Position numbers and translations under genes: made by a program. From IMG/VR virus record IMGVR_UViG_3300040801_001224, positions 248,001-312,000 of that record: DNA of 64,000 bases. The stretch is one strand, 5' to 3'. Below are positions 8,301-34,013 of this stretch, in pieces (position 1 is the stretch's first letter; each line of letters begins with the position of its first letter). The notes beneath the pieces are model-generated. The model was not told where the DNA came from. It ran no database searches and was given only the letters and a program-made list of their open reading frames with translations.

Positions 8301-8759
8301 CTATTGCTTGATAATAGTCTTTACCACGCCTTGGTTAATCTCTGTATTACCTTTGGACTGTACGAAATGTTGCGCTCTAACACGATAGAACTCGCAGTTT
8401 AAAACACCAGCACTAAAACCTTCAATGCTACGTGGACACTGGGTTGCCGGAGAAGTTATTGTAATGTCTATATCAACTGACTCAGCACCATCACGCAATG
8501 ATGCCAATGGATTGGGTTCATCGTCAGGTAATAGATCAAAAGGTTCAGCAACATTCTTTCCGGTGAACGCTTCGTCAATAGTTAGTACTGCGGCCACACC
8601 AGCTTCGGCAGAGTTAAAGCTGATAAAATCATCCTGCATATTACCCGCCATCTTTAATTCTAATGTCGCATTAGTTGCCGCAAATACGCTAATGATTGTT
8701 AAAATAAGTAAGAATAATAGAGCAACTACTAGAGTCGCCCCTTGTTGATTTTGTTTCAT
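8301..8759 (-). CDS. pilX: type IV pilus minor pilin PilX-like protein
   Basis: Prepilin leader QQG|ATLVVALLFLLILTII, LELKMAGNMQD..F..AEAG; GATAAATA box at 8765-8772 on minus strand. Confidence 0.9.
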   Translation of the reverse strand: MKQNQQGATLVVALLFLLILTIISVFAATNATLELKMAGNMQDDFISFNSAEAGVAAVLTIDEAFTGKNVAEPFDLLPDDEPNPLASLRDGAESVDIDITITSPATQCPRSIEGFSAGVLNCEFYRVRAQHFVQSKGNTEINQGVVKTIIKQ

Positions 8760-8780
8760 AGTAGTATTTATCACGCATAC

Positions 8781-8809
8781 TTGACAAGGCCATACTTTTT
8801 TGCTATAAT
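8781..8809 (+). promoter_or_regulatory. sigma70-type early promoter
   Basis: TTGACA-17-TATAAT. Confidence 0.85.
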
Positions 8810-8842
8810 ATATGCTAACAAAAATAAGTGAGTGATTAGTTT

Positions 8843-9469
8843 ATGGATAGAACAGTTATAGGACTCCACGGTTGGGGTAGTACTGGTGAGGGGTCAGCTA
8901 CCCTACAACGTGCGAGAAAATATTTCGATAAAATCGGAGTTGAATTTATCACTCCCACCTACGATTGTACCGATCCAGATGGTACAGCAAAATTACTCTT
9001 GGAAACATTGAAAGACTGTAAGACTATTGATCCATTTATAATGGGTATTAGCTATGGTGGTTTCTGGGCTCGTTGGTTGGCTAACCAAGCCGAAGCGGCT
9101 TCCCTGTTCATGTTGAATCCTGCCCTTGATGCTTATGCTCAAACTAAAAAATATTTAGGCGAGAATAAACATTACGTCACTGGGCTCTCATACTGGTTCA
9201 TCCAGGCACGTAGATTCCAATTAAGAAAATATCAGATAACCGTAGACAAACCATGTATTCCAATGACAGCTATTATTGCGATGGATGATGACATTGTGCC
9301 ACCATTTGTCACAGAAAATATGATAGGTCCGGATCGATGTAACATAGAATACGTTACCGGCGGTCACCGATTAGAAAAACCAGAACTGTGGCTTCCAAAG
9401 TTAGCAGAAGCATTTAACGGATCTAATCCAACAATGAAAAAGTCAGGTGTTTGTCGGAATACAGCTTGA
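8843..9469 (+). CDS. YqiA/YcfP-like alpha/beta hydrolase
   Basis: LHGWGS, GISYGGFWA nucleophile elbow, LNPAL, DDIVP, GGH. Confidence 0.85.
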   Translation: MDRTVIGLHGWGSTGEGSATLQRARKYFDKIGVEFITPTYDCTDPDGTAKLLLETLKDCKTIDPFIMGISYGGFWARWLANQAEAASLFMLNPALDAYAQTKKYLGENKHYVTGLSYWFIQARRFQLRKYQITVDKPCIPMTAIIAMDDDIVPPFVTENMIGPDRCNIEYVTGGHRLEKPELWLPKLAEAFNGSNPTMKKSGVCRNTA

Positions 9470-9494
9470 CAAGACCACATTTTCTTGCTATAAT
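9466..9494 (+). promoter_or_regulatory. sigma70-type early promoter with CCAC box
   Basis: TTGACA-17-TATAAT. Confidence 0.85.
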
Positions 9495-9526
9495 ATGGTT
9501 TTACAACACACTATTGGGAGATAGTT

Positions 9527-13542: not shown

Positions 13543-13621
13543 GGCGGCTATAGCTTAACAGGTTTAAAGCCCCTCTCTGTGAAAGAGGAAGATGTCGGGT
13601 CGGATCCGACTAGTCGCCCCA
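13543..13621 (+). tRNA. tRNA-His(GTG)
   Basis: G-1, C73, CCTCT-CTGTGAA-AGAGG, CCA; atypical T loop GTCGGAT. Confidence 0.9.
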
Positions 13622-13627
13622 AACAAC

Positions 13628-13703
13628 GGTAATGTAGCTCAGTGGTAGTAGCACATGATTCATACTCATGCGGTCGTTGGTTCAAATCCAACCATTACCA
13701 CCA
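13628..13703 (+). tRNA. tRNA with CAT anticodon (probably elongator Met)
   Basis: cloverleaf, CATGA-TTCATAC-TCATG, CCA. Confidence 0.9.
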
Positions 13704-13710
13704 AATTTAT

Positions 13711-13783
13711 ACTCTGTTGGAGAAACCGGTTATCTCGTCAGACTTTCAATCTGGAATTACGGGTTCGAGCCCCGTACAGAGTG
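13711..13783 (+). tRNA. tRNA-Glu(TTC), no encoded CCA
   Basis: ACTCTGT/ACAGAGT, TCAGA-CTTTCAA-TCTGG. Confidence 0.9.
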
Positions 13784-13794
13784 CAAACTATTAC

Positions 13795-13823
13795 TTGACA
13801 TTACCACTTTTTAATAGTATAAT
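13795..13823 (+). promoter_or_regulatory. sigma70-type early promoter with CCAC box
   Basis: TTGACA-17-TATAAT. Confidence 0.85.
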
Positions 13824-13842
13824 GTCAATATTAAGAAGTAAG

Positions 13843-14003
13843 TGTGTTTACAGGGTGTGAAGGCATGGGAAACGACATGCCGACAAATTCTCGAATGTCA
13901 GAGATAGGCACTGGTGTTTGAGAATGGATAAAGCCTCACCGCCTAAGAGCCATGAGCTCTATTGAGGTTGCTGGTTAGATTCCAGCCGCACCCTGTAAAC
14001 ACA
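13843..14003 (+). ncRNA. structured RNA with 15-bp closing stem and T-arm-like hairpin
   Basis: 13843-13857 pairs perfectly with 13989-14003; GGCATG/CATGCC; GCTGG-TTAGATT-CCAGC; own promoter. Confidence 0.7.
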
Positions 14004-14216
14004 TTAAGATAATGGTCTAAGCTGACCGTCGCGACAACCGATATGCTAAGTAACTGATTTAGCGGTTAGTGAAACACATAGAGGACAATGCTTCAAGGAG
14101 GATTTCCACTGCCTTGTAAAACAAAACGGTGGAGCCAAATTCAATGGGACCTCCCTGGTGATATATTACGCAAACGTCATAGTTTGTTAGCGCAACCATA
14201 GGCCCGCCAAATTTAA

Positions 14217-14293
14217 GGGGATGTAGCATAGTTGGTTAATGCGCCGGCCTGTCACGTCGGAGACCGCGAGTTCAAGTCTCGTCATTCCCGCCA
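14217..14293 (+). tRNA. tRNA-Asp(GTC)
   Basis: cloverleaf, CCGGC-CTGTCAC-GTCGG, CCA. Confidence 0.95.
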
Positions 14294-14300
14294 ATTTTAA

Positions 14301-14391
14301 GGAAGGTACCGCTAAGTGGCTGGCAACCTGGTTTGAACCCAGGGGCGTTGATTGAGAGTCGGCGGGGGTTCGATTCCTCTACCTTCCTCCA
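14301..14391 (+). tRNA. tRNA-Ser(TGA)
   Basis: CCTGG-TTTGAAC-CCAGG, long variable arm, CCA. Confidence 0.92.
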
Positions 14392-14559
14392 AACCGGTAA
14401 CCGTTAGTATCTAGACTATGTGAGGCACCACAGACGTGGCGAACGGTTAGCATAGTTGACCAATAGGTGGTGGAGAATGCCACTGGGACGGTTTAATGCT
14501 GTCGCAAGACCGCTATAGGGGAGCAACGATACTGAGAGTGCGAACCCCACCAATTTTAT

Positions 14560-14650
14560 AGTAGGTTGCCAGAGTTGGTCTATTGGCGCGGACTGCTAAT
14601 CCGTTGGGTTCTAACGAGCCACGTGGGTTCGAATCCCACACCTACTGCCA
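14560..14650 (+). tRNA. tRNA-Ser(GCT)
   Basis: GCGGA-CTGCTAA-TCCGT, long variable arm, GCCA. Confidence 0.92.
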
Positions 14651-14656
14651 AATAAT

Positions 14657-14743
14657 GTATGTGCGTCAGAGTTGGAGAGCTGAAGCGGACTGTAAACCCG
14701 TTGCCAAAGTGCTGAATAGGTTCGATTCCTATCACATACACCA
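14657..14743 (+). tRNA. tRNA-Tyr(GTA)
   Basis: GCGGA-CTGTAAA-CCCGT, long variable arm, CCA. Confidence 0.92.
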
Positions 14744-14820
14744 AATTTCGTTTACGTAGGCTTTCGATATAAGCCCGGGGGGAAGCATGAAACCCCCTCA
14801 AGAACATGCTTATCTTTAAT

Positions 14821-14898
14821 GCGTCTATAGTGTTCAACGGCTCAGCACGTTAGGCTTCCACCCTGAAAGTTTCGGTTCGAATCCGAATAGACGCTCCA
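14821..14898 (+). tRNA. tRNA-Gly(TCC)
   Basis: GCGTCTA/TAGACGC, CTTCCAC loop, TCCA. Confidence 0.92.
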
Positions 14899-14983
14899 AT
14901 TTTTCTTGCCGATGTGGTGTACAACACATCATTAAATAATGCCATACACGTAAAGTCACTGTGGGGGCAAGAACATTTTATAT

Positions 14984-15058
14984 GGGTCACGGTCTGGGTA
15001 ACCGGGTTGGTCTCCAAAACCGACTGTCTGCCAATTTCGATTATTGGGTGGCCCGCCA
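14984..15058 (+). tRNA. tRNA-Trp(CCA), degenerate D and T arms
   Basis: GGGTCAC/GTGGCCC, TTGGT-CTCCAAA-ACCGA, GCCA. Confidence 0.7.
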
Positions 15059-15143
15059 ATTTTAATGAGAGGAAACAAAGGATGAAACCTGGTAAGATCT
15101 AGGCGGACAACATACAGTCCGCCATATAAATTAAATATATGAC

Positions 15144-15220
15144 GGACTCATAGCTCAATTTGGTAGAGCCCCGGTCTTTTAAATCGGTTGTTCCAGGTTC
15201 GAGGCCTGGTGGGTCCACCA
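15144..15220 (+). tRNA. tRNA-Lys(TTT)
   Basis: CCGGT-CTTTTAA-ATCGG, CCA. Confidence 0.93.
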
Positions 15221-15336
15221 ATTTTTATCTTCGCAGACCTGTAACCATATTCTGCCTCCGCCGTCGACGAAAACAGGATGGGCTGTCGGCGCAAGGTTTG
15301 TAGTTATCCTGACCCAAAACTACATCCATTTTCTGT

Positions 15337-15419
15337 CGCAGGCGAGTGGAACGGATATATAAACCATACCGGGCTCATAACCCGTGTGATACTGGGTTCG
15401 ACTCCCAGGTCTGCTACCA
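15337..15419 (+). tRNA. initiator tRNA-fMet(CAT)
   Basis: unpaired C1, GGG/CCC anticodon stem, enlarged D loop. Confidence 0.85.
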
Positions 15420-15421
15420 AT

Positions 15422-15497
15422 GGAGAGTTAGCTTTGTAGGTCAAAGCGTCCGGTTGAAGCCCGGAAGAACCTGGTTCGAATCCTGGACTCTCCACCA
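15422..15497 (+). tRNA. tRNA-Phe(GAA)
   Basis: TCCGG-TTGAAGC-CCGGA, CCA. Confidence 0.9.
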
Positions 15498-15516
15498 AAT
15501 TTAGATAAATAGTGTT

Positions 15517-15993
15517 ATGCGATTAGATGAGATACTAAAAGAAGAAACACAGATACAATTCGGATCAGCATTTATGAATCCAGTGACTAAAGATAAGACG
15601 AAATTATTTTTAGACAGCGAATTGTATATAGACCAGGAAGGCAAAGAATTCAAAAGTTGGTGGAGCAATCCAGAACAACATTTTAAGAATGGCGGTGTTT
15701 TTGCTGTGGCATATGCAGATGGAGAACCAGTAGGCGTTGGTGTCATAAAACTACCTGACGAAGTGCTTAGTGGTGAAGTAGATGGCAAGGAAATCGCGTA
15801 TATAGGAGTAGTCGGATTCTTAGTAAAAGAAGAATTTAGAAACTATGGGTTAGCAACACGGTTGGCTTATCTACTCGAAAACAAAATACTTAGTGTATAC
15901 AATCTTCCAGACAATACTACGCCAATTGTAGTTTGTACTGGCAAAGCCTGTGAAGTAGCACAGAATTTCAAAAGAATACAAATCGAAAAATAA
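15517..15993 (+). CDS. GNAT-family acetyltransferase-like protein with short MRLDEILKE leader
   Basis: FLVKEEFRNYGLATRL resembles GNAT motif A; GATAAATA at 15504. Confidence 0.7.
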   Translation: MRLDEILKEETQIQFGSAFMNPVTKDKTKLFLDSELYIDQEGKEFKSWWSNPEQHFKNGGVFAVAYADGEPVGVGVIKLPDEVLSGEVDGKEIAYIGVVGFLVKEEFRNYGLATRLAYLLENKILSVYNLPDNTTPIVVCTGKACEVAQNFKRIQIEK

Positions 15994-16051
15994 CAATATA
16001 TTGACAACGCCACTTACTTGTGTTATTATAATAATATAAGGAGAAGATGTT

Positions 16052-16249
16052 ATGATATATGAAAGCTCAAAAGACTACGGTACCGGTGAAGTCACCCTAC
16101 TGTTTGATAATCGAACACCATCCTATACGGAAATATCAGAGCATGTTGAGGAGAACTATTCAATGACGTCCTTCTCATACATGATTGAGGAACCTACCGA
16201 ATATAATGGTCTGGTAAATCCTGGTATAGTGAGGGTAATTCAACAATGA
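16052..16249 (+). CDS. hypothetical protein
   Basis: ORF track; promoter TTGACA at 16001; AAGGAG SD. Confidence 0.65.
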   Translation: MIYESSKDYGTGEVTLLFDNRTPSYTEISEHVEENYSMTSFSYMIEEPTEYNGLVNPGIVRVIQQ

Positions 16250-16428
16250 AATTCCAAGTTACTGTAATAGAAAGCGAACGTGGCTGGGGTCAAAAGATTG
16301 ACGAAGTCCGTGAGTTCAACAGTGCTGACAAAGCATGGAAATTTTACGATGAAGTAAACAGCAGAAATACAGAACGTACTGCTCCAGACATATACTGGCA
16401 AGCACAGCCGCCAGTAAGAATAGAATAA
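16246..16428 (+). CDS. hypothetical protein
   Basis: ORF track; ATGA coupling. Confidence 0.65.
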   Translation: MKFQVTVIESERGWGQKIDEVREFNSADKAWKFYDEVNSRNTERTAPDIYWQAQPPVRIE

Positions 16429-16429
16429 T

Positions 16430-16505
16430 AGTCCCGTAGCTCAGTCAGGAGAGCGCAGAGCTGATAACTCTGAGGTCGCAGGAGCAAAGCCTGCCGGGAC
16501 TACCA
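16430..16505 (+). tRNA. tRNA-Ile(GAT), atypical T loop AGCAAAG
   Basis: CAGAG-CTGATAA-CTCTG, CCA. Confidence 0.85.
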
Positions 16506-16512
16506 ATTTAAC

Positions 16513-16587
16513 GCCGAGTGGTCTGGATGTTTAGGTGCTGGTCTGCAAAACCATGTTAACAGGGTTAGATTCCCTGACTCGGCTCCA
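16513..16587 (+). tRNA. tRNA-Cys(GCA)
   Basis: GCCGAGT/ACTCGGC, CTGCAAA loop, TCCA. Confidence 0.88.
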
Positions 16588-16588
16588 A

Positions 16589-16665
16589 GCCCCTATAGCT
16601 TAACTGGTTAAAGCGTCGAGCTCATAACTCGGGGAGTCCTTGTTCGAATCAAGGTGGGGGCACCA
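16589..16665 (+). tRNA. tRNA with CAT anticodon (probably Ile2)
   Basis: GCCCCTA acceptor resembles Ile2; CTCATAA loop. Confidence 0.88.
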
Positions 16666-16672
16666 ATTTTTT

Positions 16673-16830
16673 TAACTTGTGCCGGAACTGGTATACGGGG
16701 GTGTGGTCTCAGTCAATATGAATAGGGTTGTGAATAAAGAATAGCAACTCTTGTACCCAGGGCGAAAACCACCAGGCGGTAAGCAGTACAACGCAAAACG
16801 CCATTGTAGGTTCAAATCCTACCAAGTTAA
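16673..16830 (+). tRNA. class II (Leu/Ser-type) tRNA gene with about 53-nt insertion in the anticodon loop
   Basis: TAACTTG/CAAGTTA acceptor, Leu-type D arm, GTAGG-TTCAAAT-CCTAC, GTGGT/ACCAC stem enclosing 60 nt. Confidence 0.65.
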
Positions 16831-16902
16831 TTATGCGCGGTCCACGTTCCTCGCTGTAACTTTTGTTACATAGGTTGTGATTATGGCGGCGCACCATTTT
16901 AT

Positions 16903-16976
16903 AGGGTCATAGTGTAATGGTAACACCCGAGATTTTGATTCTCGTATTCCAGATTCGAGTTCTGGTGACCCTGCCA
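16903..16976 (+). tRNA. tRNA-Gln(TTG)
   Basis: CGAGA-TTTTGAT-TCTCG, GCCA. Confidence 0.93.
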
Positions 16977-17005
16977 ATTTTACGCAGTTCGTGGTAAATA
17001 CAGTT

Positions 17006-17392
17006 ATGTGTACCCTGACGAACTTTTGTGTATTAGATGACATCGACGGCATCACAATCATATGTTTAACAGACGATATGAGTCAACAAGATGCCATGCT
17101 TCTTATCGATCACTTGAGGGAACACGAACTGTACCATTATCGTCTGTTGGATTTTAATCAGTATCCATGTCAGATGTCTTCAAAAGACATTGAAGCACTT
17201 GCTGAATACGACAAGAAGTTTCCAGAAAAAAACTATGGTGCTCTGATTGCTAAAGACAACCTAACATATGGTTTAATGAGAAAATATGCGGCCCATCGTG
17301 AAATGGATGATCTAGCAACTATACGTGTATTTAGGACCATGCGTGAAGGCATAGCGTGGTTAAAAAAGAAAAGACACGATCAAGATAAATAA
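17006..17392 (+). CDS. STAS/SpoIIAA-like protein, copy 1
   Basis: LLDF...A(L/I)IA....YG..R...RVF....G..WL pattern; paralog of next gene. Confidence 0.65.
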   Translation: MCTLTNFCVLDDIDGITIICLTDDMSQQDAMLLIDHLREHELYHYRLLDFNQYPCQMSSKDIEALAEYDKKFPEKNYGALIAKDNLTYGLMRKYAAHREMDDLATIRVFRTMREGIAWLKKKRHDQDK

Positions 17393-17396
17393 TACT

Positions 17397-17780
17397 ATGC
17401 TAATACATGACTTATACGACTTTAACTATGTCGATGGTATTCTTATGACTACCCTTAAACATAGCCCGACACTTGAGACAATCAGACAATTGGTTGATTA
17501 TCAGATCAAGACAGACCGTTATCGTTATCGTTTATTTGATTTTAATGGTTTTACTCCTGCTGAAATGAGGGCAAGTGAAGTCAGAAGATTAGCAGACTAT
17601 GATCGAGCATATCCAGAAGAAAGTTACTCAGCTATCATAGCTGATGACGCACTATTGTTTGGCATTGAACGCATGTTTGAAACCTACAGAGACCGCAGTG
17701 GTTATTCTCGAGTAAGAGTATTCAACGATAAAGAAAATGGTCTAACCTGGCTTAAATTACTACAAGCCAATAATTCTTAA
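17397..17780 (+). CDS. STAS/SpoIIAA-like protein, copy 2
   Basis: YRYRLFDFN, AIIADDALLFGIERMF, RVFNDKENGLTWL. Confidence 0.65.
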   Translation: MLIHDLYDFNYVDGILMTTLKHSPTLETIRQLVDYQIKTDRYRYRLFDFNGFTPAEMRASEVRRLADYDRAYPEESYSAIIADDALLFGIERMFETYRDRSGYSRVRVFNDKENGLTWLKLLQANNS

Positions 17781-17798
17781 AATCTTTTGAAAAAAAGG

Positions 17799-17827
17799 TT
17801 GACAAACCCATTATACTCTAGTATAAT
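17799..17827 (+). promoter_or_regulatory. sigma70-type promoter of the giant ncRNA
   Basis: TTGACA-17-TATAAT. Confidence 0.85.
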
Positions 17828-17833
17828 ACAATT

Positions 17834-23488: not shown

Positions 23489-23495
23489 AAATTTA

Positions 23496-24012: not shown

Positions 24013-24288
24013 ATGATAATGGATAAATCATACGATATTTTAATTTATGGGCGACCGGGTTGTCCTTTTTGTACCCGAGCAGTTCAATTTGCAGAAGGTA
24101 CATCAGAGTCAAATCCAAAGTTTAACTTTGAATACACTGATATCTGGAAAGAAGGCATCACAATGGAACACTTGAGTGAATGTGCAGGCAAAGATGTTAG
24201 AACAGTGCCACAGATATTTGCTAATGAAAAGCATGTTGGTGGCTGTGATGATTTTGAACGTTTCCTTATACAGGAAGATTTAATATAG
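24013..24288 (+). CDS. grxA: glutaredoxin (GrxA-like)
   Basis: YGRPGCPFC, TVPQIF, GGCDDF. Confidence 0.92.
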   Translation: MIMDKSYDILIYGRPGCPFCTRAVQFAEGTSESNPKFNFEYTDIWKEGITMEHLSECAGKDVRTVPQIFANEKHVGGCDDFERFLIQEDLI

Positions 24289-24291
24289 AAT

Positions 24292-24626
24292 ATTTGCTCC
24301 TCGTTAAACACTAAGGTACCTGATGCGAGGCGAAGGGTTCAATTCCCGGGTGAGGACGTTGCACAACTATCCTTGCCTAGTACCAGAGCAAATTTTTTGA
24401 TACTGAGATGTAAAAACATGCGTGACGAGAATCGCCCCTTAAATGGGCTTGGAGAGAGCGATTTCCCTTTCAGTATTAACTTTTTAATGCGTACAGACCT
24501 CAAAGGTGTACCGCTGAAGCTTGGTCCAAGTAGACACGTAGAGCTTCATGTTGACTGGGTGAGAGGCCCTTTGCGTTGTAGGTAGGGATGCGGCCACCGG
24601 CTTTGAGGAAACCTTCTACGCATTAA
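24292..24626 (+). ncRNA. three tandem stem-enclosed RNA cassettes
   Basis: 24292-24393 (8 bp, internal GGGTTCAATTCCC), 24397-24479 (10 bp), 24484-24626 (10 bp plus CCTCAAAG/CTTTGAGG). Confidence 0.65.
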
Positions 24627-24637
24627 TTTATTTTATT

Positions 24638-24901
24638 ATGAAAGAAATATACTTAGTTATAGCAGGCGTTGACCATGGACACTCATTCCTCATGGGTGCC
24701 TTCCCGGACCGGGATGAAGCACAGCGTTTACTCAATGAATTGGAATTTCACCAGAAAGTGGGCGTGGCACCTTCTGACATGCCTTACAGAGCTAAGTATT
24801 TCGATTATGTCTATATACACGAAACAACGTTATATGACAATCGCAAGCAATTGGAAGATTCGGCACAAGAGTTCGAACCAATTCCACCTTTTAGAAAATA
24901 A
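24638..24901 (+). CDS. hypothetical protein
   Basis: ORF track. Confidence 0.65.
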   Translation: MKEIYLVIAGVDHGHSFLMGAFPDRDEAQRLLNELEFHQKVGVAPSDMPYRAKYFDYVYIHETTLYDNRKQLEDSAQEFEPIPPFRK

Positions 24902-24906
24902 TTATT

Positions 24907-24984
24907 ACCCCTGTAGCTCAGTGGAATTAGAGCAAGCGGCTTCTACCCGCTCGGTCGGGAGTTCGAATCTCTCCGGGGGTGCCA
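24907..24984 (+). tRNA. tRNA-Arg(TCT)
   Basis: AGCGG-CTTCTAC-CCGCT, GCCA. Confidence 0.94.
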
Positions 24985-25022
24985 AACATTCAGATAAATA
25001 TTAAAAACACAAGGAGAACGGC

Positions 25023-25928
25023 ATGAAACTAATCGTAATTTTATTCCTATCCTTATTCGTTGTATCCTGTGGGGGTGGAGGGAATAAGAGAGATGATACC
25101 AGACAGCCTCCAGTAATACCACCGCAGAAACCCTTTGTGGAAATATTTCCTGAATACAGGACTTATTTAAAAATGTATGGAACCCAGGATCAAATAAACA
25201 AAAACTCATGGGTATTCACAAGTCATAAAATCGACTATGAAGAATGTGAACGAAACGACACATCTCCCTGTCGGAAGACCAAAAAGCTATATTACTATGA
25301 CGCAAACCATGTTCCTGGTCGTGAAACAAAATGGACTTTTAACTTAACTGTTAATAAGTATAACATAATTGATCCACCTTACTGGATTATCATATTCCAA
25401 GATTGGTTCGATTATGATCCGAATGATTTTACTCCATCAGGCGCACAAGGCGGTAATCCACCATTTCAGACATTGAAGCTAAAAGAGTTTAGGGGTGCCT
25501 TACATTTAGGTGTGTTCAACAACAGGTGGCAATGGAACTATGACTATAACAATCCATATAATCCAACCGACCCAAGTGCCAATGACATTGACAAGCGACC
25601 AGTAAATGAACTAACAGGTTCCATACCGTTAGTCGTTGGAAGAACGTATCCAGTTGAAATAATCATTAGAGATGGCATAACACTTGAGCGTGGCAGTGTA
25701 CAGGTCAAGGTAAACGGTCGTCAGGTGAGCAACCAGTTTTACCGAACAAAGCCAGACAGATCTCCCCGCCCTGGTGCTGTTCAATTTGGACAATACTGGG
25801 ATAGAGAATACAATGGAAGAATTAATGGTTGTGTTGAAGCAACAGGCGAGTTAGAAAAGGACTGTAAGAGCAACACAGTAACTATAGAAAACTTCAGAGT
25901 ATTTGAGCGGAACGCTTTAACACAATAA
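25023..25928 (+). CDS. lipoprotein, possible polysaccharide-lyase-like beta-jelly roll
   Basis: lipobox VVS|CGGGG; WIIIFQDW and QFGQYW resemble lyase-fold strands; function tentative. Confidence 0.5.
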   Translation: MKLIVILFLSLFVVSCGGGGNKRDDTRQPPVIPPQKPFVEIFPEYRTYLKMYGTQDQINKNSWVFTSHKIDYEECERNDTSPCRKTKKLYYYDANHVPGRETKWTFNLTVNKYNIIDPPYWIIIFQDWFDYDPNDFTPSGAQGGNPPFQTLKLKEFRGALHLGVFNNRWQWNYDYNNPYNPTDPSANDIDKRPVNELTGSIPLVVGRTYPVEIIIRDGITLERGSVQVKVNGRQVSNQFYRTKPDRSPRPGAVQFGQYWDREYNGRINGCVEATGELEKDCKSNTVTIENFRVFERNALTQ

Positions 25929-25945
25929 AAAAACATAAGGAGAAC

Positions 25946-26398
25946 GTGATGTTCGACGAAAGCAAATTAGCCGAACTTAAAGAAGCTATTCAAAACTCAA
26001 GTAAGACTACAAAAGTTTATGTCGGTTCAGACAGCAAAAGAAACAAAGCAGGTAGAGTACGTTTCGCAACAATCGCAATTTTACATATAGATGGCAATAA
26101 GGGTGGACAAGTGTTTAGCTTTATTGATCATGAAATGGATTATTCTCCAAATAAAAATCCACGCTTACGTCTTGTTATGGAAGCTTACAGAGCGGCTGAT
26201 TTAGCGGCGGCTATCCTTCCTGAAGTTGGAGATCGTGACTTCGAAATACATCTTGACCTTAACTCTAATCCAGACTATAAGTCAAATACGGCTATACGTG
26301 AAGCGGCTGGTTATGTATTAGGTATGACTGGCATCAAACCAAAAATGAAGCCCCAGGCTTGGGCAGCCAGCCATTGTGCTGACGTATACACCAAATAA
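25946..26398 (+). CDS. YkuK-like ribonuclease H-fold protein
   Basis: VYVGSDS, RLVMEAYR, EIHLDLN, KP.AWAASHCAD. Confidence 0.85.
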   Translation: MMFDESKLAELKEAIQNSSKTTKVYVGSDSKRNKAGRVRFATIAILHIDGNKGGQVFSFIDHEMDYSPNKNPRLRLVMEAYRAADLAAAILPEVGDRDFEIHLDLNSNPDYKSNTAIREAAGYVLGMTGIKPKMKPQAWAASHCADVYTK

Positions 26399-26433
26399 TT
26401 GTTTGTATTGAAGTCTAAGTGATAAATAAAAGT

Positions 26434-27186
26434 ATGGACAAACCATATCACTACGTTTATCGCATCACAAATCTCCTGGAGTCAAAACATTATTATGGCT
26501 CCAGGAGTTCGATAAATAAACCACATGAAGATCTTGGAGTTGTGTATTTTTCGTCAAGTAGTGACGAGCAGTTCAAGAAGCTTCAGGTGTCACAGCCAGA
26601 AATATTTAAATATAAGGTAATAAAATCATTTAGTAGCAGAGAGGATGCGATTTTATTTGAAATAAAGTTACATAAAAGATTCAATGTCAGTAGTGAAGAC
26701 AAGTTCTATAACAAAGCAATTCAGTTGACTTCTGGTTTCAGTAACTACGGAAATAAAGAGATAGGAGACAAAATTTCCGACAAAGCCATCGGCCGTTTTA
26801 AGGGGCAAACTTATGAAGAAATTTACGGTGAAAACAAAGCAACAGAACTAAGGAAATTGCGTTCTGAAAACATGAAAAGTCATTTGAAACAAAATCCAGG
26901 AATCAGAGACGGTGAAAAAAATCCAAATTATGGAAAAAAATGGAATGATGAAAAACGAAAAAAAATGTCTAAAAGACAACAGGGTGAAAACCACACTCAA
27001 TATGGTTACTTTTGGGTTACAGATGGCAAAATAAATAAAAAATTACCGCCGAACTCTGAAATACCCAACGGCTTCACAAAGGGAAGAACTTGGCCTATTA
27101 CACAATGTCCTCACTGTGGTTACGAAGGCCGTGGACCAAATATGAAAAGAATACACTTTGATAGATGTGAAGACAAAAATAAATAA
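26434..27186 (+). mobile_element. GIY-YIG-type homing endonuclease gene with NUMOD3-like repeats
   Basis: YHYVYRITN..KHYYGSR, YFSSS, FYNKA, GEKNPNYGKK. Confidence 0.85.
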
Positions 27187-27196
27187 TTGCCCAATT

Positions 27197-27274
27197 AAGG
27201 GCGGGGGTCGTTTACACCAAACACCTTGAATGGTGACGGCCGGGGCATTGAAGGGGTGTCTGTACAAAGCCCTT
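27197..27274 (+). ncRNA. structured element sharing segments with tRNA-Val
   Basis: AAGGGC/GCCCTT ends; TCGTTTACACC identical to 27312-27322. Confidence 0.4.
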
Positions 27275-27284
27275 CGCACTTTCT

Positions 27285-27359
27285 AGTCCGGTAGCTCAGA
27301 GGCAGAGCACCTCGTTTACACCGAGGGGGTCGGGATCTCGGAATTCCCCCGGACTACCA
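27285..27359 (+). tRNA. tRNA-Val(TAC), atypical T loop
   Basis: CCTCG-TTTACAC-CGAGG, CCA; T loop CTCGGAA. Confidence 0.88.
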
Positions 27360-27374
27360 ATTTTTACGATAAAT

Positions 27375-27977
27375 ATGAGCATGAATACTCCTAACACCAT
27401 ACTGTGTATGTTTTCCGGTGGATTAGATTCCACTGGCATGCTCTACCGTCTATTAACAGATCCAGAGTATGGTGAGTATAATATACATGTTCACCACGTC
27501 AAGATGTGTAATAGAGAAAACCGCCAACAAGCAGAGTCGATTGCTGTTGAAAACATTATTGGATGGTTTCACAATAACGGCATGTCTAATTTTAGATATA
27601 CTGAAAACACCATTGATTTTGAATTCCTTAAACATGGAAACTTTCCCTGGGATTCGGATGTTACTAATTTTGTTGCCGGTAATATCGTTAAGAATAAGAA
27701 AAATACTTATAAGTATATCGCTTTTGGTAGAACTAAAAACGATACAAACAGGACTATTACGTCATTATCAAATGACATATTAGAAGGCGTCCTGAGAGGC
27801 CGTCCTGTTGAAAAAATATATCCTATAACTGACCTAACAAAGGAAGAGTTATGGGATTACCTTCCTGAGGAATTGCGGGAATACACGTGGTCATGCCGAC
27901 GCCCCAAATATATTGACGGTGTCCCTACAGCATGTGGTCGCTGTGTTCCCTGCAAAGATCTAAAACATATCAAATAA
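27375..27977 (+). CDS. queC: QueC-like PP-loop ATPase
   Basis: MFSGGLDST, WSC.......CGRCVPC zinc site. Confidence 0.8.
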   Translation: MSMNTPNTILCMFSGGLDSTGMLYRLLTDPEYGEYNIHVHHVKMCNRENRQQAESIAVENIIGWFHNNGMSNFRYTENTIDFEFLKHGNFPWDSDVTNFVAGNIVKNKKNTYKYIAFGRTKNDTNRTITSLSNDILEGVLRGRPVEKIYPITDLTKEELWDYLPEELREYTWSCRRPKYIDGVPTACGRCVPCKDLKHIK

Positions 27978-27982
27978 ATTAT

Positions 27983-28056
27983 CCCCCGGCCAACTGGATG
28001 GAGCTCTGGCTACGAACTAGATGTGCGTGTAGGTTCGAATCCTACCTGGGGGGCCA
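27983..28056 (+). tRNA. tRNA-Arg(ACG), truncated D arm
   Basis: TCTGG-CTACGAA-CTAGA, GTAGG-TTCGAAT-CCTAC, GCCA. Confidence 0.78.
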
Positions 28057-28062
28057 AACAAT

Positions 28063-28139
28063 GCTGTCGTAGCCCAATTGGCAGAGGCGTGGGATTCAAA
28101 ATCCCAATGTTGTGAGTTCGACTCTCACCGACAGTACCA
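28063..28139 (+). tRNA. tRNA with CAA (Leu) anticodon but short variable loop
   Basis: TGGGA-TTCAAAA-TCCCA, 5-nt variable loop, ACCA. Confidence 0.88.
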
Positions 28140-28145
28140 AACAAT

Positions 28146-28235
28146 GCCTAGGTGGTGGAATTCTGGTATACACATCGGGTTTAAATTTCGACGGCTGTAA
28201 TGGCCATGAGGGTTCGAGTCCCTCCCTAGGCACCA
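28146..28235 (+). tRNA. tRNA-Leu(TAA)
   Basis: GCCTAGG/CCTAGGC, TTTAAAT loop, long variable arm. Confidence 0.9.
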
Positions 28236-29718: not shown

Positions 29719-29760
29719 AATTATCTTGACAGAATTCACAAAATAGCGTATAATAGACAT

Positions 29761-30561: not shown

Positions 30562-30626
30562 CATAGTTCACATTAAATTACACGGTATTATGGATAAATA
30601 CGGGAAAGGTAACCAGGGAATTGGCA

Positions 30627-33600
30627 ATGAACAAGTTAAAACTACTGTTATTAACAGCATTTCTTACACTATCATTGGGTGCTGATGATACAGAAATATA
30701 TCAATCAAATGTAAATAATAATTCTGGCGAGAAACCAAAGGTCTTAATTATATTTGATAATTCATCAAGTATGGTGACTAACAACGTAACACAGCAAGCA
30801 GTTGCGTATAATCCAAGCATAGATTACAATGGCAGTTTTCGTGATGACCGAATATATTGGTCCACAACAGGGACACCATCTGGCAATAACTATTTTAATG
30901 CTGGCCGTAACCGTTGTGCTGAATCATACGGACCATTAGCGGCTGAAGGCTTCTTTCAGACCAGGGCGCAACGTTGGCGTAGTAGTGGGCGTTTTGGTGG
31001 GTCATGGCGAAACCTAAGTCGCCGGGTAACAACACCGGTTCACGTTGATTGTGAAGCAGATGTGATCGCTGGCAATGTTGGCAATGGCAGTGGACAGAGT
31101 GATGGTCTTCCCTCACCAACTGGTCCTTACGGCGGCACTGGTAACGTCAACTGGGGTGGCAACTCTTATACATTCTATACAGGCAACTACCTAAACTGGT
31201 TCTTTAACGCCAGCACAGTTGAATCGACACGTTTAGCAGTAGCACAAGACGTAATACGTGACCTGGTATCTGCTAATACTGGCATTGATTTTGGCCTGAT
31301 GATATTCAACAATAACTCTGACTCACGTTGGGACGGTGGTCGAATCGTTAACTCCATTGTAGAAGGTGACGACGGAACACAGAGACAGTCCATATTAAAC
31401 AACATTGGACTGATAAATCCAAAAACCGGATCGCCATCTACCTTCACCCCACTATGTGAAACAACGTATGAAGCGTATCGTTATATGAGTGGACAGAGTG
31501 TTGTATTTGCCAATGAGATAAGATTAGGTGAAGACACTATACCCAAGGACCCTAAGGCTGAAAGCCCACTAGGTGTATACGATTCACCTGCTACGGACTG
31601 TGCTTTTACGTATATCATTCTAATGACAGACGGACAGCCAACTCGCGATGAGTCAGCAAATCAGTTCATACGTGATCTGACAGGCAAGGATTGTCTAACA
31701 TATGGTAATACCACAAGTTGTCTACCAATAATCGCAGAATACATGGCTAATACTGATCTAGACAATGACACAACTAATGGTAACCAGTATGCTATTACGT
31801 ATACCATTGGATTTACTACTGACCAGGAACTTTTACAGGATACAGCACGTTTGGGCAAGGGACAATACTTTACTGCTAATGATACAGCAAGTCTAACGGC
31901 GGCTTTCCAGGGTGCTATTACAGCCATCCTATCCACTAATTCAGCATTCACTTCACCAGCAGTAGCAGTGGACACGTTCAGCCGAACAGAGTCACGTGAC
32001 GATATATTCTTTGCTATGTTTGAGCCAAGTGACACAACTAACTGGCCAGGCAACATCAAACGTCTACGATTAGCAGATAGTTCTGGTGATAAAATACTAG
32101 TGGATGTCAATGGAGATCCTGCCCTCGATCCTTCTACCGGACGTATCAGAGACACGGCACAGACGTACTGGTCACCAAACATAGATGGCAATCAGGTAAC
32201 TGAGGGTGGTGTGGGTGAGCTATTAGCTAGGCGTGATCCTGATACTCGTGAGATTTACACTAACACTGGAACCGGTGGTTCATTAGAAGACTTTGATGAT
32301 GTTGCGTTCGATGTTGGTGCGTTTGGTGTCACAGATATAAATCAAGTGTATGATGAATTTAACGTAACTAACGCCATACAACTAACAGATTTGATCCTTT
32401 GGTCAGCTGGTTATGATGTTGATGACGAAAATAACAATGGTGACCGAACTGATGCGAGACCCTGGATACTTGCCGACATGCTACACTCAAAGCCTCTAGC
32501 TATCAACTATGGCGCAACAGGCGGTGTGTACGATAAAGACAACCCAAATATCAAGCTAGTAGTAGGCACTAATGGCGGTTTCTTCCACATGTTCAGCACT
32601 GACACCGGTGTAGAAGATTGGGCATTCTTCCCTAAAGAACTCAGCAGTATGTTGTTGGAAAGACGTGCTGAACGTGTGACTGCTGATAACGTATATGGCA
32701 TTGATGCTTCACCAGTTGTTTATATACTGGACAAAGAGCTTGACGGCACTATTGACGCCAGTGACGGTGACCGAGTTTATGTGTACTTTGGGTTACGTAG
32801 AGGAGGTAGCATACTATACGCTTTAGATATCACTGACCCAGGTAGCCCAGAGTTCTTATTTAAAATCGACAGGAACACAACTGGTTTTAGTCTATTAGGA
32901 CAAACTTGGAGTGAGCCATTGGTGACTACAATATCAGGACACGATGGTCCAGTGCTAATCTTTGGTGCTGGCTACGACACAAATAAGGACGCAACTGGCG
33001 TTGGTACGCCAGACAGTGTGGGCTTGGGTGTCTATGTCGTTGACGCAATCACCGGTCAACTGTTACGCAGTGTGACGCCAGCCGCTACAACTAACACCAA
33101 CCTACAAGCACCTATACAGCACAGTGTACCAAGTAATATTGCTGGCATAGATTCAAATGGTGGTGGTAATACCGACAGACTATACTTTGGTGACACTGGC
33201 GGTAACTTATGGCGTGTGGATATGCTTGGTGACCTTGACGAACAGAAATGGCGTGTCACTAAACTGGCTGATGTTAATGACGGAACGACGGCTGGTGATA
33301 GACGTTTCTTCAACGAACCGGATGTTGTTAGAACTAAGAGTACGCTATGTTTAGACGACGAGTGTACCCAAGTCGCTAATGTAAACTATGATGCGGTATT
33401 GATCGGTAGTGGTGACAGGACAAATCCTAACGCCACTGATGTAGCCAACGAGTTCTATATGTTCCGTGACTTCCAAACTGGAGCTTACAGTACTGACATA
33501 GCGGATTGCGATGATGACACAATCGTTGAATACAGATGCGACCTACCAATCACACCTGATGATTTGTATGACGCAACCACTGACATTGTTGGCACTGACG

Positions 33601-34013
33601 AAATAGCAGAAAAGAAACTACGTAAGTCTATGGGATGGCGTATTGGATTGAATGCTGTTGGTGAAAAAGCATTGTCCGAAAGTATAACGTTAGGCGGCAC
33701 AGTGTTCTTCACAACGTTCTCACCAGACCCACAGTTAGTGAGTGTTTGTGTGCCATTGCCAGGACAGGGTCGCTTATATGCTGTTCGGGTTTCCGATGCA
33801 TCTGCAACCAAAGACTTCAACAATGACGGTAACTTGGATAGAGAGTCATTACTGGGTAGCTTAATACCAGATGCACCCAGCTTACACTTTGGTGATGATG
33901 GGTTTATCCGTTTATTATTCCCGAGTGGCGGTGGTTTATCAGACACCAACCCTGTTAACAGTGGGGAGAGTTTGCCTGGCTTATATAGCATATACTGGTG
34001 GAGAGCTGAATGA
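30627..34013 (+). CDS. pilY1: type IV pilus adhesin PilY1/PilC (vWA-like plus beta-propeller)
   Basis: signal peptide then DDTEIY; IIFDNSSSM; MTDGQP; LADMLHSKP; GTNGGFFH; GQTWSEP; DRLYFGDTGGNLWRVD; GSGDRTNP; FTTFSP. Confidence 0.93.
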   Translation: MNKLKLLLLTAFLTLSLGADDTEIYQSNVNNNSGEKPKVLIIFDNSSSMVTNNVTQQAVAYNPSIDYNGSFRDDRIYWSTTGTPSGNNYFNAGRNRCAESYGPLAAEGFFQTRAQRWRSSGRFGGSWRNLSRRVTTPVHVDCEADVIAGNVGNGSGQSDGLPSPTGPYGGTGNVNWGGNSYTFYTGNYLNWFFNASTVESTRLAVAQDVIRDLVSANTGIDFGLMIFNNNSDSRWDGGRIVNSIVEGDDGTQRQSILNNIGLINPKTGSPSTFTPLCETTYEAYRYMSGQSVVFANEIRLGEDTIPKDPKAESPLGVYDSPATDCAFTYIILMTDGQPTRDESANQFIRDLTGKDCLTYGNTTSCLPIIAEYMANTDLDNDTTNGNQYAITYTIGFTTDQELLQDTARLGKGQYFTANDTASLTAAFQGAITAILSTNSAFTSPAVAVDTFSRTESRDDIFFAMFEPSDTTNWPGNIKRLRLADSSGDKILVDVNGDPALDPSTGRIRDTAQTYWSPNIDGNQVTEGGVGELLARRDPDTREIYTNTGTGGSLEDFDDVAFDVGAFGVTDINQVYDEFNVTNAIQLTDLILWSAGYDVDDENNNGDRTDARPWILADMLHSKPLAINYGATGGVYDKDNPNIKLVVGTNGGFFHMFSTDTGVEDWAFFPKELSSMLLERRAERVTADNVYGIDASPVVYILDKELDGTIDASDGDRVYVYFGLRRGGSILYALDITDPGSPEFLFKIDRNTTGFSLLGQTWSEPLVTTISGHDGPVLIFGAGYDTNKDATGVGTPDSVGLGVYVVDAITGQLLRSVTPAATTNTNLQAPIQHSVPSNIAGIDSNGGGNTDRLYFGDTGGNLWRVDMLGDLDEQKWRVTKLADVNDGTTAGDRRFFNEPDVVRTKSTLCLDDECTQVANVNYDAVLIGSGDRTNPNATDVANEFYMFRDFQTGAYSTDIADCDDDTIVEYRCDLPITPDDLYDATTDIVGTDEIAEKKLRKSMGWRIGLNAVGEKALSESITLGGTVFFTTFSPDPQLVSVCVPLPGQGRLYAVRVSDASATKDFNNDGNLDRESLLGSLIPDAPSLHFGDDGFIRLLFPSGGGLSDTNPVNSGESLPGLYSIYWWRAE

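What the first reader, a model, noticed from the sequence alone, without database searches (positions are those of the whole stretch)
8301..34013. Phage-encoded type IV pilus tip module: PilX and full-length PilY1, both late-expressed and 22 kb apart
Seen: pilX (8301-8759, minus strand, own GATAAATA box at 8765) and a 1128-aa pilY1 with signal peptide (30627-34013, GATAAATA at 30593). No pilV, pilW, pilE or assembly ATPase is in the window. Known: PilY1 and PilX cooperate in the pilus priming complex, adhesion and surface sensing. Inference: the phage swaps the host pilus tip to block pilus-binding competitors, or to make infected cells attach or aggregate before lysis. I do not recall this pair as a described lytic-phage module.
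Basis: partly seen in the sequence, partly recalled or inferred. Interest (0 to 1): 0.85.

Follow-up and report, generated by a model that had tools for sequence, protein, structure and literature searches.

The report
Jumbo phage carries pilus-tip cap genes
An uncultured 328-kb phage carries its own intact copies of the two proteins that cap a bacterial type IV pilus (PilX and the tip adhesin PilY1), taken from its probable host lineage, kept under selection, and changed at the calcium switch that controls pilus extension and retraction, which suggests the phage re-tips or disables the pili of infected cells.

Summary
ORF 8301-8759(-) is a PilX-type minor pilin. ORF 30627-34013(+) is a full-length PilY1 with a signal peptide, a vWA domain with an intact MIDAS motif, and a beta-propeller whose best fold match is P. 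aeruginosa PilY1 (3HX6). Both lie in a 328-kb IMG/VR jumbo-phage contig with 26 tRNAs and phage-specific promoters.

Both genes are nearest to the adjacent pilX-pilY1 of one uncultured low-GC gammaproteobacterium (L001), a sister lineage to Halieaceae, so host capture is the likely origin. A sister phage fragment keeps pilX in the same slot (dN/dS 0.05). PilY1 keeps 85 of 88 columns invariant in 85 bacterial homologs. The one radical change is Asp to Gly at position 5 of the Ca2+ motif that acts as the extension/retraction switch in P. aeruginosa.

PilX and PilY1 are the two top, interlocking parts of the tip complex. No pilV, pilW or pilE was detected on the contig or elsewhere in IMG/VR.

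"Late-expressed" is only partly supported. Both genes have the enriched GATAAATA box, but pilY1 also lies downstream of a consensus sigma70-type promoter. No deposited phage and no paper shows a phage PilY1/PilX. The closest precedent is prophage FimU replacing the host's at the pilus tip. Function is inferred, not shown.

The parts
8301..8759 (-). pilX: a 152-aa PilX/GspK-type minor pilin with a short leader ending in Gly7, no Glu at mature position 5, a roughly 57-residue N-terminal helix, a 3-stranded sheet and a conserved Cys108/Cys122 pair.
   Evidence: dN/dS is 0.054 against the sister phage L007.
8765..8772 (-). GATAAATA late-type promoter box for pilX. The ATG starts exactly 5 nt downstream, giving a leaderless-type arrangement.
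   Evidence: The box is conserved in sister phage L007, where a 20-nt leader with an AGGAG follows it.
8781..8809 (+). Perfect sigma70-consensus promoter, divergent from the pilX promoter, driving the neighbouring plus-strand gene (context).
29726..29754 (+). Perfect sigma70-consensus (probable early) promoter at the head of the unit UDP-glucose-dehydrogenase-like gene, pilY1 and a 66-aa ORF. It could read through into pilY1.
   Evidence: No plus-strand terminator-like site lies between it and pilY1.
30593..30600 (+). GATAAATA late-type promoter box 26 nt upstream of the pilY1 ATG.
30627..34013 (+). pilY1: a 1128-aa full-length type IV pilus tip adhesin and biogenesis factor.
30627..30683 (+). 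Sec-type signal peptide (aa 1-19: Lys-rich start, 13-residue hydrophobic core, Gly-Ala end). The mature N-terminus ADDTEIY is nearly invariant in the family.
   Evidence: Sequence; alignment.
30756..30770 (+). MIDAS DxSxS motif of the vWA domain (D44, S46, S48). The partner residues T274 and D335 are also intact.
32424..33926 (+). C-terminal PilY1 beta-propeller domain (about aa 600-1100).
33150..33176 (+). Ca2+-binding loop, aa 842-850 (DSNGGGNTD), aligned to P. aeruginosa D851-D859. Gly846 replaces an Asp present in 85 of 85 bacterial homologs, and Asn848 replaces Leu/Ile/Val in 76 of 85.
34010..34210 (+). 66-aa acidic ORF whose start overlaps the pilY1 stop (ATGA). It has no family match and its role is unknown.

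Best explanation
The phage captured the adjacent pilX-pilY1 pair from the minor-pilin operon of its host lineage, an uncultured low-GC gammaproteobacterium related to Halieaceae. It has kept both genes functional. During infection they are transcribed from phage promoters. PilY1 is exported through Sec and PilX inserts into the inner membrane as a prepilin. The two then lock together and sit on the host's own FimU-PilW-PilV base in the pilus priming complex, so new pili carry a phage-made cap or fail to be maintained. The phage PilY1 has lost an invariant Asp in the Ca2+ switch loop, so the re-capped machine probably no longer obeys the normal calcium-dependent balance between extension and retraction. 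The most likely benefit is receptor masking or disabling: pilus-dependent competitor phages, and possibly the phage's own progeny, can no longer use the pili of an infected cell.

Shown here: gene identity, integrity, origin, purifying selection, promoter motifs and the loop substitution. Inferred: export, incorporation into the tip, the effect on pilus dynamics and the fitness benefit.
For: - Identity and integrity.
- Conservation: PilY1 keeps 85 of 88 columns that are invariant in 85 bacterial homologs, and its divergence is uniform over both halves.
- Selection: pilX dN/dS is 0.054 at dS 1.15 against a sister phage with the same synteny, as low as or lower than its neighbours.
- Origin: both genes have the same nearest bacterial neighbour, L001, where they are adjacent in fimU-pilV-pilW-pilX-pilY1-pilE. 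The PilY1 tree supports the phage+L001 pairing at 100. L001 has 43% GC, close to the phage's 41%, whereas the Halieaceae loci sampled have 55-63%.
- Compatibility: the PilX N-terminal helix, which packs in the pilus core, is almost identical to L001's.
- Why this pair: published models place PilX and PilY1 as the two top parts, joined by beta-strand complementation, and PilX stabilises PilY1 (PMC13190605). Some bacteria also carry orphan pilX-pilY1 pairs.
- Ca motif: motif 1 is Dx(D/N)xDGxxD; D859A abolishes pili and D859K gives non-retractile pili (PMC3248442). The phage has Gly at position 5.
- Precedent: prophage FimU replaces host FimU at the tip and blocks tip-binding phages (PMC12952977).
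- Promoters.
Against: - There are no expression, localisation or phenotype data.
- Only one phage PilY1 sequence exists, so Gly846 could in principle be an assembly or strain-level variant. The second change in the same loop (Asn848) needs two or more base changes, which argues against an error.
- No single-mutant data exist for the equivalent P. aeruginosa residue (D855), so the direction and size of the effect on calcium binding are unknown.
- Exclusion functions are usually early, whereas pilX has only the late-type promoter.
- A cap meant only to mask or disable pili would not obviously need the intact vWA/MIDAS domain.
Confidence: 0.42

Rival explanations
1. Dominant-negative off switch. 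The phage cap is a poison subunit: a calcium-blind PilY1 with its cognate PilX occupies priming complexes and cannot oppose retraction, like P. aeruginosa D859A. Infected cells therefore lose surface pili altogether rather than displaying re-tipped ones.
For: All 85 bacterial homologs have Asp at loop position 5 and only the phage has Gly. Loss of calcium binding at this motif abolishes pili in P. aeruginosa.
Against: The whole 1128-aa protein, including the tip-exposed vWA/MIDAS half, is as conserved as the propeller, which a mere blocker would not need. The terminal Asp (D850, equivalent to D859) is kept. The effect of the position-5 change is untested.
Confidence: 0.2
2. Behavioural takeover. 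The pair keeps or boosts adhesive pili so that infected cells stick to particles or to neighbouring hosts, or it feeds PilY1-dependent surface signalling. It would act together with other host-like sensory genes of the phage and raise local transmission.
For: The vWA/MIDAS adhesin domain is intact. The same genome region encodes a PAS-histidine-kinase-receiver hybrid, a CheW and a GGDEF-domain protein. Late-type promoters fit a role near lysis.
Against: The GGDEF domain is degenerate, with SDNAF in place of GGDEF. These genes are scattered, not clustered with pilX or pilY1. The link between PilY1 and c-di-GMP or cAMP signalling is known only from P. aeruginosa. There are no data on host lifestyle.
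Confidence: 0.2
3. Passenger DNA or artefact. The genes are recently picked-up host DNA of no use to the phage, or a chimeric assembly.
For: Jumbo phages accumulate host-like genes. Only one full contig is known.
Against: Identity to any bacterial copy is 56% or less. Phage promoters abut both genes. pilX is conserved in a second phage from another sample with dN/dS 0.05. PilY1 retains 85 of 88 invariant columns.
Confidence: 0.04
4. Virion adhesin. PilY1, with PilX as an adaptor, is a structural part of the phage particle used to bind hosts or surfaces, as its late-type promoter might suggest.
For: The late-type promoter class usually drives structural genes in T4-like phages. vWA and beta-propeller domains are adhesive.
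Against: PilY1 has a Sec signal peptide and PilX a membrane-inserting prepilin helix, which would send both out of the cytoplasm where virions assemble. There are no neighbouring structural genes. In this window the motif also precedes many non-structural genes.
Confidence: 0.03

Closest known systems
Prophage-encoded FimU (P-FimU) of F10-like Pseudomonas aeruginosa phages (Sztanko et al., Cell Rep 2026, PMC12952977)
   Same: A phage-encoded homolog of a type IV pilus tip-complex component that takes the place of the host's part. It is the only published case of a phage replacing a pilus part with its own functional version, and there it excludes tip-binding phages.
   Different: That case involves one small adaptor pilin (FimU, at the base of the tip complex) expressed from ~40-kb temperate prophages. 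This case involves the two top parts (PilX plus the 1128-aa adhesin PilY1) in a 328-kb genome that looks virulent, behind phage lytic-cycle promoters, with a changed Ca2+ switch. The function here is untested.
Cellular PilX-PilY1 of fimU-pilVWXY1E operons (P. aeruginosa PilY1, PDB 3HX6; Halieaceae and L001 homologs)
   Same: The domain plan is the same: signal peptide, vWA with MIDAS, beta-propeller. PilX has the same fold and Cys pair. Identity is 45-56% over the full length.
   Different: The genes are encoded by a phage, 22 kb apart on opposite strands, instead of adjacent. They have no accompanying pilV, pilW or pilE. Calcium motif 1 is broken at position 5. PilX is the shortest in its family at 152 aa, with a loop deletion.
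Phage inhibitors of type IV pili (Aqs1 of DMS3, Tip of D3112, PfsE of Pf); the roles of Tip and PfsE are cited from my own knowledge, Aqs1 from the abstract of PMC13436744
   Same: The likely outcome is the same: the phage alters host pili so that pilus-dependent competitors cannot infect.
   Different: Those are small novel proteins that target pilus-machinery components (PilB or PilC, from my own knowledge). Here the phage supplies homologs of the pilus's own structural cap.
Orphan bacterial pilX-pilY1 pairs and multiple tip clusters (M. xanthus clusters 1-3; L003/L038 here)
   Same: They show that PilX+PilY1 is an exchangeable unit that can change tip properties on a shared machine.
   Different: Those are chromosomal paralogs of the same cell, not virus-borne genes.

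Membership tests
PilY1/PilC type IV pilus tip adhesin (PF05567) | C-terminal PilY1-type beta-propeller | tested here: met
   Pfam scores 31.7 bits against a cut-off of 28.1. The family profile hits 3HX6 at E=9e-17. Foldseek's top hit is 3HX6 at E=2e-20, TM 0.61, with the next fold at E=5e-8.
PilY1/PilC type IV pilus tip adhesin (PF05567) | Ca2+-binding motif 1, Dx(D/N)xDGxxD, in the propeller | tested here: not met
   The phage loop is DSNGGGNTD. Position 5 is Gly where 85 of 85 bacterial homologs have Asp. Positions 1, 3, 6 and 9 are kept.
PilY1/PilC type IV pilus tip adhesin (PF05567) | N-terminal vWA domain with a complete MIDAS (in the vWA-type subfamily) | tested here: met
   D44, S46, S48, T274 and D335 are all present.
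PilY1/PilC type IV pilus tip adhesin (PF05567) | Sec signal peptide for export | tested here: met
   Judged by inspection only, because no dedicated predictor was available. The N-terminus has basic residues, a 13-residue hydrophobic core and a Gly-Ala end, and the mature start ADDTEIY aligns with the family.
PilY1/PilC type IV pilus tip adhesin (PF05567) | Encoded next to minor pilin genes (pilX directly upstream) | tested here: not met
   pilX is 22 kb away on the other strand. In most bacterial loci examined that carry a full-length copy, a pilX-like ORF lies directly upstream of pilY1.
PilY1/PilC type IV pilus tip adhesin (PF05567) | Locates to the pilus tip and primes assembly | not testable with these tools
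   This needs expression and microscopy or fractionation.
PilX (GspK-like) core minor pilin (PF14341) | PilX_N N-terminal domain, with a leader ending in Gly and no Glu5 | tested here: met
   Pfam scores 48 bits against a cut-off of 25.5. G7 is invariant and the mature start is ATLVV.
PilX (GspK-like) core minor pilin (PF14341) | Pilin fold (long N-terminal helix on a beta-sheet) with a conserved Cys pair | tested here: met
   The AlphaFold model has pLDDT 83, with helix 3-59 and three strands. C108 and C122 are invariant. Foldseek against the PDB gave no significant match.
PilX (GspK-like) core minor pilin (PF14341) | Beta-strand complementation with the cognate PilY1 | not testable with these tools
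   No multimer prediction was available. The feature is known from published models.
Phage-encoded pilus-tip replacement defence (P-FimU type) | The phage encodes a homolog of a host tip-complex protein | tested here: met
Phage-encoded pilus-tip replacement defence (P-FimU type) | Expressed from a prophage in lysogens | tested here: inconclusive
   No integrase or repressor appears in the 82 kb examined, and the genome has virulent jumbo-phage traits: 26 tRNAs, a family B DNA polymerase and T4-type promoters. About 246 kb was not read.
Phage-encoded pilus-tip replacement defence (P-FimU type) | Incorporated into pili and blocks tip-binding phages | not testable with these tools
   This is an experimental question.
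T4-type late promoter (NATAAATA, gp55-dependent) | Motif enriched, co-oriented with genes and at a fixed short distance from the start sites | tested here: met
   There are 25 sites against 4.2 expected. An A is conserved 6 nt downstream at 22 of 25 sites. The ATG falls at that position 11 times against 0.11 expected.
T4-type late promoter (NATAAATA, gp55-dependent) | gp55/gp33 homologs in the genome and late timing | not tested

The most novel reading that the evidence does not exclude
A virulent jumbo phage re-caps its host's type IV pili with its own PilX-PilY1 pair. The pair's Ca2+ switch has been deliberately altered, making it a calcium-independent cap. This forms part of a wider takeover of the host's surface-sensing and motility circuitry (phage CheW, PAS-kinase-receiver hybrid, degenerate GGDEF) that changes how the infected cell attaches, moves and is seen by other phages before lysis.
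Probability: 0.2. Interest if true: 0.85.

Novelty: new variant of a known kind. Interest (0 to 1): 0.66.

Why it matters
Until the prophage-FimU work, phages were known only to block pili with small inhibitors. This case would extend "replace the host's part with your own" in three directions: to the pilus adhesin itself, to a large virulent-type phage, and to marine uncultured hosts.

It also offers a natural experiment on two open questions in pilus biology. First, is PilX+PilY1 an exchangeable cap on a common base? Second, what does the conserved calcium loop do? Here a natural, otherwise intact protein differs at one invariant ligand.

For phage ecology, it points to competition for pilus receptors, or control of infected-cell attachment, in particle-associated marine Gammaproteobacteria.

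Tried and rejected
- **Deposited phages, DNA level.** Megablast of both regions against 50,697 phages found nothing.
- **Deposited phages, protein level.** tblastn of PilY1 found only 'Acinetobacter phage MD-2021a'. Its locus is flanked by spoT, rpoZ, rpsP and a full pil operon, so it is mislabelled bacterial chromosome and was rejected as a precedent. tblastn of PilX found nothing.
- **PHROGs.** No family matched either protein.
- **IMG/VR.** Scans with single proteins and with alignments for PilY1 and PilX found only the contig itself.
- **Metagenome scan for a sister-phage pilY1.** It returned only bacterial copies at 53% identity or less. The scanned collection did not return the window's own contig either, so absence there is weak evidence.
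- **Other minor pilins in IMG/VR.** Scans for PilW, PilV and PilE found none.
- **Naming the L001 organism.** Its cluster has no named members. The IleRS search gives unnamed relatives at 72-83% and named ones (Halieaceae) only at about 63%.
- **Foldseek of the PilX model against the PDB.** No significant match.
- **Gene look-up.** One look-up failed because of a different start codon.
- **GGDEF protein.** I considered it as an active cyclase supporting c-di-GMP manipulation and rejected that, because the active-site motif is degenerate.
- **pilX promoter spacing.** I first read the 5-nt box-to-ATG spacing as a defect, then rejected that on finding it is a recurrent class.
- **Orans et al. 2010.** The paper is not held. 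Its results are cited through PMC13190605 and PMC3248442.


Full report

Yes. The minus-strand ORF 8301-8759 (152 aa from ATG 8759) and the plus-strand ORF 30627-34013 (1128 aa) are intact. They match the public gene calls for this contig.

The short protein matches Pfam PilX_N (48 bits, cut-off 25.5). The long one matches T4P_PilY1 (31.7 bits, cut-off 28.1). NCBIfam gave only weak sub-threshold hits (GspK, PilC) and PHROGs gave none.

The motif occurs 25 times against 4.2 expected, 22 times on the coding (+) strand. TATAAATA is not enriched. A motif scan found no other prepilin-type ORF in the window.

**2. What genome is this?**

The window is bases 248001-312000 of a 328,096-bp contig from JGI metagenome 3300040801, listed in IMG/VR as UViG_3300040801_001224.

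- It has no nucleotide relative among 50,697 deposited phages.
- The window carries 26 tRNA genes.
- It also carries NAMPT, an NMNAT-NUDIX fusion, a MoxR-type ATPase, a DUF2201 VWA-like protein, UvdE and homing endonucleases.
- A family B DNA polymerase lies just to the left.
- One conserved phage protein finds jumbo and T4-like myoviruses at 35-39% identity.

This is therefore an uncultured jumbo phage, remote from cultured ones. It is probably virulent, though about 246 kb was not read.

**3. The proteins in detail**

PilY1:
- It has full-length homologs (about 100% coverage, 45-53% identity) that sources name PilY1, mostly from Halieaceae.
- A profile of the family hits the solved P. aeruginosa PilY1 C-terminal domain (3HX6) at E=9e-17.
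- An AlphaFold model (pLDDT 71) finds 3HX6 first (E=2e-20, TM 0.61), far ahead of generic propellers.
- The N-terminus looks like a Sec signal peptide, and the mature start ADDTEIY is nearly invariant in the family.
- The vWA MIDAS residues (D44, S46, S48, T274, D335) are all present.
- Against 85 bacterial homologs, the phage protein keeps 85 of 88 invariant columns and 101 of 105 columns that are at least 95% conserved.
- Divergence from its nearest relative is even along the chain, at 53% identity in the N half and 58% in the C half.

PilX:
- It has the leader-Gly, lacks Glu5 (like GspK-type pilins), and has an invariant Cys pair.
- It models confidently (pLDDT 83) as a pilin: a 57-residue helix on a three-stranded sheet.
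- It is the shortest member found, with a deletion in the variable loop.

**4. The one radical change**

The loop that aligns to the P. aeruginosa calcium site D851-D859 reads DSNGGGNTD in the phage.

- Position 5 (Gly846) is Asp in all 85 bacterial homologs.
- Position 7 (Asn848) is Leu/Ile/Val in 76 of 85.
- The other two changes at invariant columns are conservative (Arg to Lys, Trp to Phe).

The published motif is Dx(D/N)xDGxxD. In P. aeruginosa, loss of calcium binding there (D859A) abolishes pili, and a calcium-bound mimic (D859K) gives pili that cannot retract (PMC13190605; PMC3248442).

The phage copy is therefore an otherwise well-kept PilY1 with an altered switch. The direction of the effect cannot be told from sequence. 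Only one phage sequence exists, but two changes in one loop, one of which needs at least two base substitutions, argue against an assembly error.

**5. Origin**

- In most bacterial loci examined that carry a full-length copy, a pilX-like ORF lies directly upstream of pilY1, usually within fimU-pilV-pilW-pilX-pilY1-pilE. A few genomes have an orphan pilX-pilY1 pair.
- In a maximum-likelihood tree, the phage PilY1 is sister to the copy in locus L001 (support 100). That pair lies just outside the Halieaceae radiation.
- The phage PilX is also nearest to L001's PilX, after the sister phage. It is 47% identical overall, with an almost identical N-terminal helix.
- L001 is a normal bacterial locus (murJ, ileS, lspA, ispH, the pil operon, pilSR, clpB) with 43% GC. 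The phage has 41% GC, and the Halieaceae loci sampled have 55-63%.
- L001's IleRS has unnamed relatives at 72-83% identity and named ones (Halieaceae) only at about 63%.

The simplest reading is capture of an adjacent pilX-pilY1 pair from the host lineage, followed by separation within the phage genome. Two separate captures from the same lineage cannot be excluded.

**6. Is it maintained in phages?**

A 1.9-kb contig from another metagenome (L007) carries an 89%-identical 152-aa PilX in the same slot. It sits antisense between the same small phage genes.

- dN/dS for pilX is 0.054 at dS 1.15. That is as low as or lower than the four neighbouring genes, which range from 0.056 to 0.25.
- No sister-phage pilY1 could be found. 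The protein search excludes short fragments, and the metagenome scan returned only bacterial copies.
- Conservation of pilY1 within phages therefore rests on its retained invariant residues alone.

**7. Expression signals**

The window has two sharply defined promoter classes.

- The first is 20 perfect TTGACA-N16-18-TATAAT sites (19 of them with a 17-nt spacer), all on the + strand, against 0.12 expected. Many share a spacer core, and they are probably early promoters read by host sigma70.
- The second is the 25 GATAAATA boxes, which fit the NATAAATA late-promoter type of T4-like phages (PMC2984593).
- An A is conserved 6 nt after the box at 22 of 25 sites. In 11 cases the ATG starts exactly there, against 0.11 expected.

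The 5-nt spacing at pilX is therefore not a defect. It belongs to a recurrent class that looks like leaderless transcripts. The sister phage keeps the box but has a 20-nt leader with AGGAG.

pilX has only this late-type promoter. It sits back-to-back with a sigma70-type promoter that drives the neighbouring gene. pilY1 has its own box 26 nt upstream. It also lies downstream of the sigma70-type promoter at 29726, with no terminator-like site between them. "Late-expressed" is thus a fair inference for pilX and incomplete for pilY1. Neither has been measured.

**8. Are other tip parts present?**

- None appears among the Pfam-annotated genes of record 239-321 kb.
- Alignment-based scans of IMG/VR, which holds the whole contig, found no PilW, PilV or PilE relative anywhere.
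- The FimU scan found 69 other viral contigs, many of about 40 kb, which fits the published prophage FimU class.
- These scans depend on conserved peptide patterns, so they are good but not exhaustive.

**9. Mechanism**

Published models order the tip complex as PilA, FimU, PilW, PilV, PilX, PilY1. PilX and PilY1 are joined by beta-strand complementation, and PilX stabilises PilY1. The phage therefore carries exactly the self-compatible top pair. It keeps the PilX helix that must pack against host pilins.

I infer the following steps:
1. The pair is exported.
2. It caps host FimU-PilW-PilV in the priming complex.
3. It changes tip identity and, through the altered calcium loop, pilus dynamics.

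The most likely pay-off is to deny pilus receptors to competing phages, or to the phage's own progeny. This is analogous to prophage FimU, which replaces host FimU and blocks tip-binding phages.

Rival readings are scored in the report sections:
- A pure off switch that removes pili.
- Control of attachment or surface signalling, alongside the phage's CheW, PAS-kinase-receiver hybrid and a GGDEF protein. That GGDEF domain is degenerate (SDNAF), so I do not count it as a cyclase.
- Passenger DNA.
- A virion role.

**10. Novelty**

No genuine deposited phage, no other IMG/VR contig and no paper found shows a phage-borne PilY1 or PilX. The single database "phage" with PilY1 is mislabelled bacterial chromosome.

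The principle that a phage supplies its own pilus tip part has been published for FimU. I therefore rate this a new variant of a known kind. It involves different and larger parts (the adhesin and its partner), a different phage lifestyle, and a switch-loop change not seen in any cellular homolog examined.

Noticed in passing
window 15504, 17384, 19205, 22810, 26421, 27368, 28645, 43702, 60674 (+) and 8772 (-): GATAAATA is followed by exactly 5 nt and then ATG 11 times (0.11 expected). An A is conserved 6 nt after the box at 22 of 25 sites. This looks like a whole class of leaderless late-type transcripts in a T4-like jumbo phage.
   Followed up: partly
window, 20 sites on the + strand (for example 7691, 8781, 9466, 29726, 34207, 55463): There are perfect sigma70-consensus promoters TTGACA-N16-18-TATAAT (20 found, 0.12 expected; 19 with a 17-nt spacer). 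Many share the spacer core ACCACTTTT, and they are probably the phage's early promoter class.
   Followed up: partly
window 13544-28235 and 42839-42925: There are 26 tRNA genes. ARAGORN reads one, at 18270-18347, with a four-base anticodon (tttg), which might be a frameshift-suppressor-like tRNA or a mis-call.
   Followed up: no
window 5817-7694, 22329-22751; L189:4726-5382 (about 3 kb left of the window): The phage encodes host-like sensory proteins: a PAS-histidine-kinase-receiver hybrid, a CheW (87 bits), and a two-TM GGDEF-domain protein whose active-site motif is degenerate (SDNAF).
   Followed up: partly
window 8781-9496: The 208-aa UPF0227 (alpha/beta hydrolase-like) gene at 8843-9469 is absent from sister phage L007. 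It is bounded by two copies of the roughly 30-bp promoter element (8781-8812 and 9466-9496), which suggests gain or loss by recombination between promoter repeats.
   Followed up: partly
window 7950-8300: A 116-aa phage protein carries a ribosomal L7/L12 C-terminal domain (30.7 bits, cut-off 25.9). It is conserved in the sister phage.
   Followed up: no
L006 (GenBank CAKLQH020000003.1, 'Acinetobacter phage MD-2021a'): This 240-kb record in the phage collection is bacterial chromosome (spoT, rpoZ, gmk, rpsP, trmD, a full pil operon) labelled as a phage. It creates a false 'phage PilY1' hit.
   Followed up: yes
L003/L004/L038 (Pseudomonadales MAG HK-STAS-PROT-146): This is a bacterial orphan pilX-pilY1 pair with no pilV or pilW nearby. 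It lies next to a type I secretion ABC transporter and a large RTX-like protein, and the same genome also has a full operon copy (L063).
   Followed up: partly
window 20309-21397; L188:14036-14875 and 19823-20774: Other probably exported or surface-active host-like genes are present: a reprolysin-type metalloprotease, a glycoside hydrolase family 6 protein and a Laminin_G_3 protein.
   Followed up: no
window 34010-34210: A 66-aa acidic ORF has a start that overlaps the pilY1 stop codon (ATGA), so the two may be translationally coupled. It has no family match.
   Followed up: no
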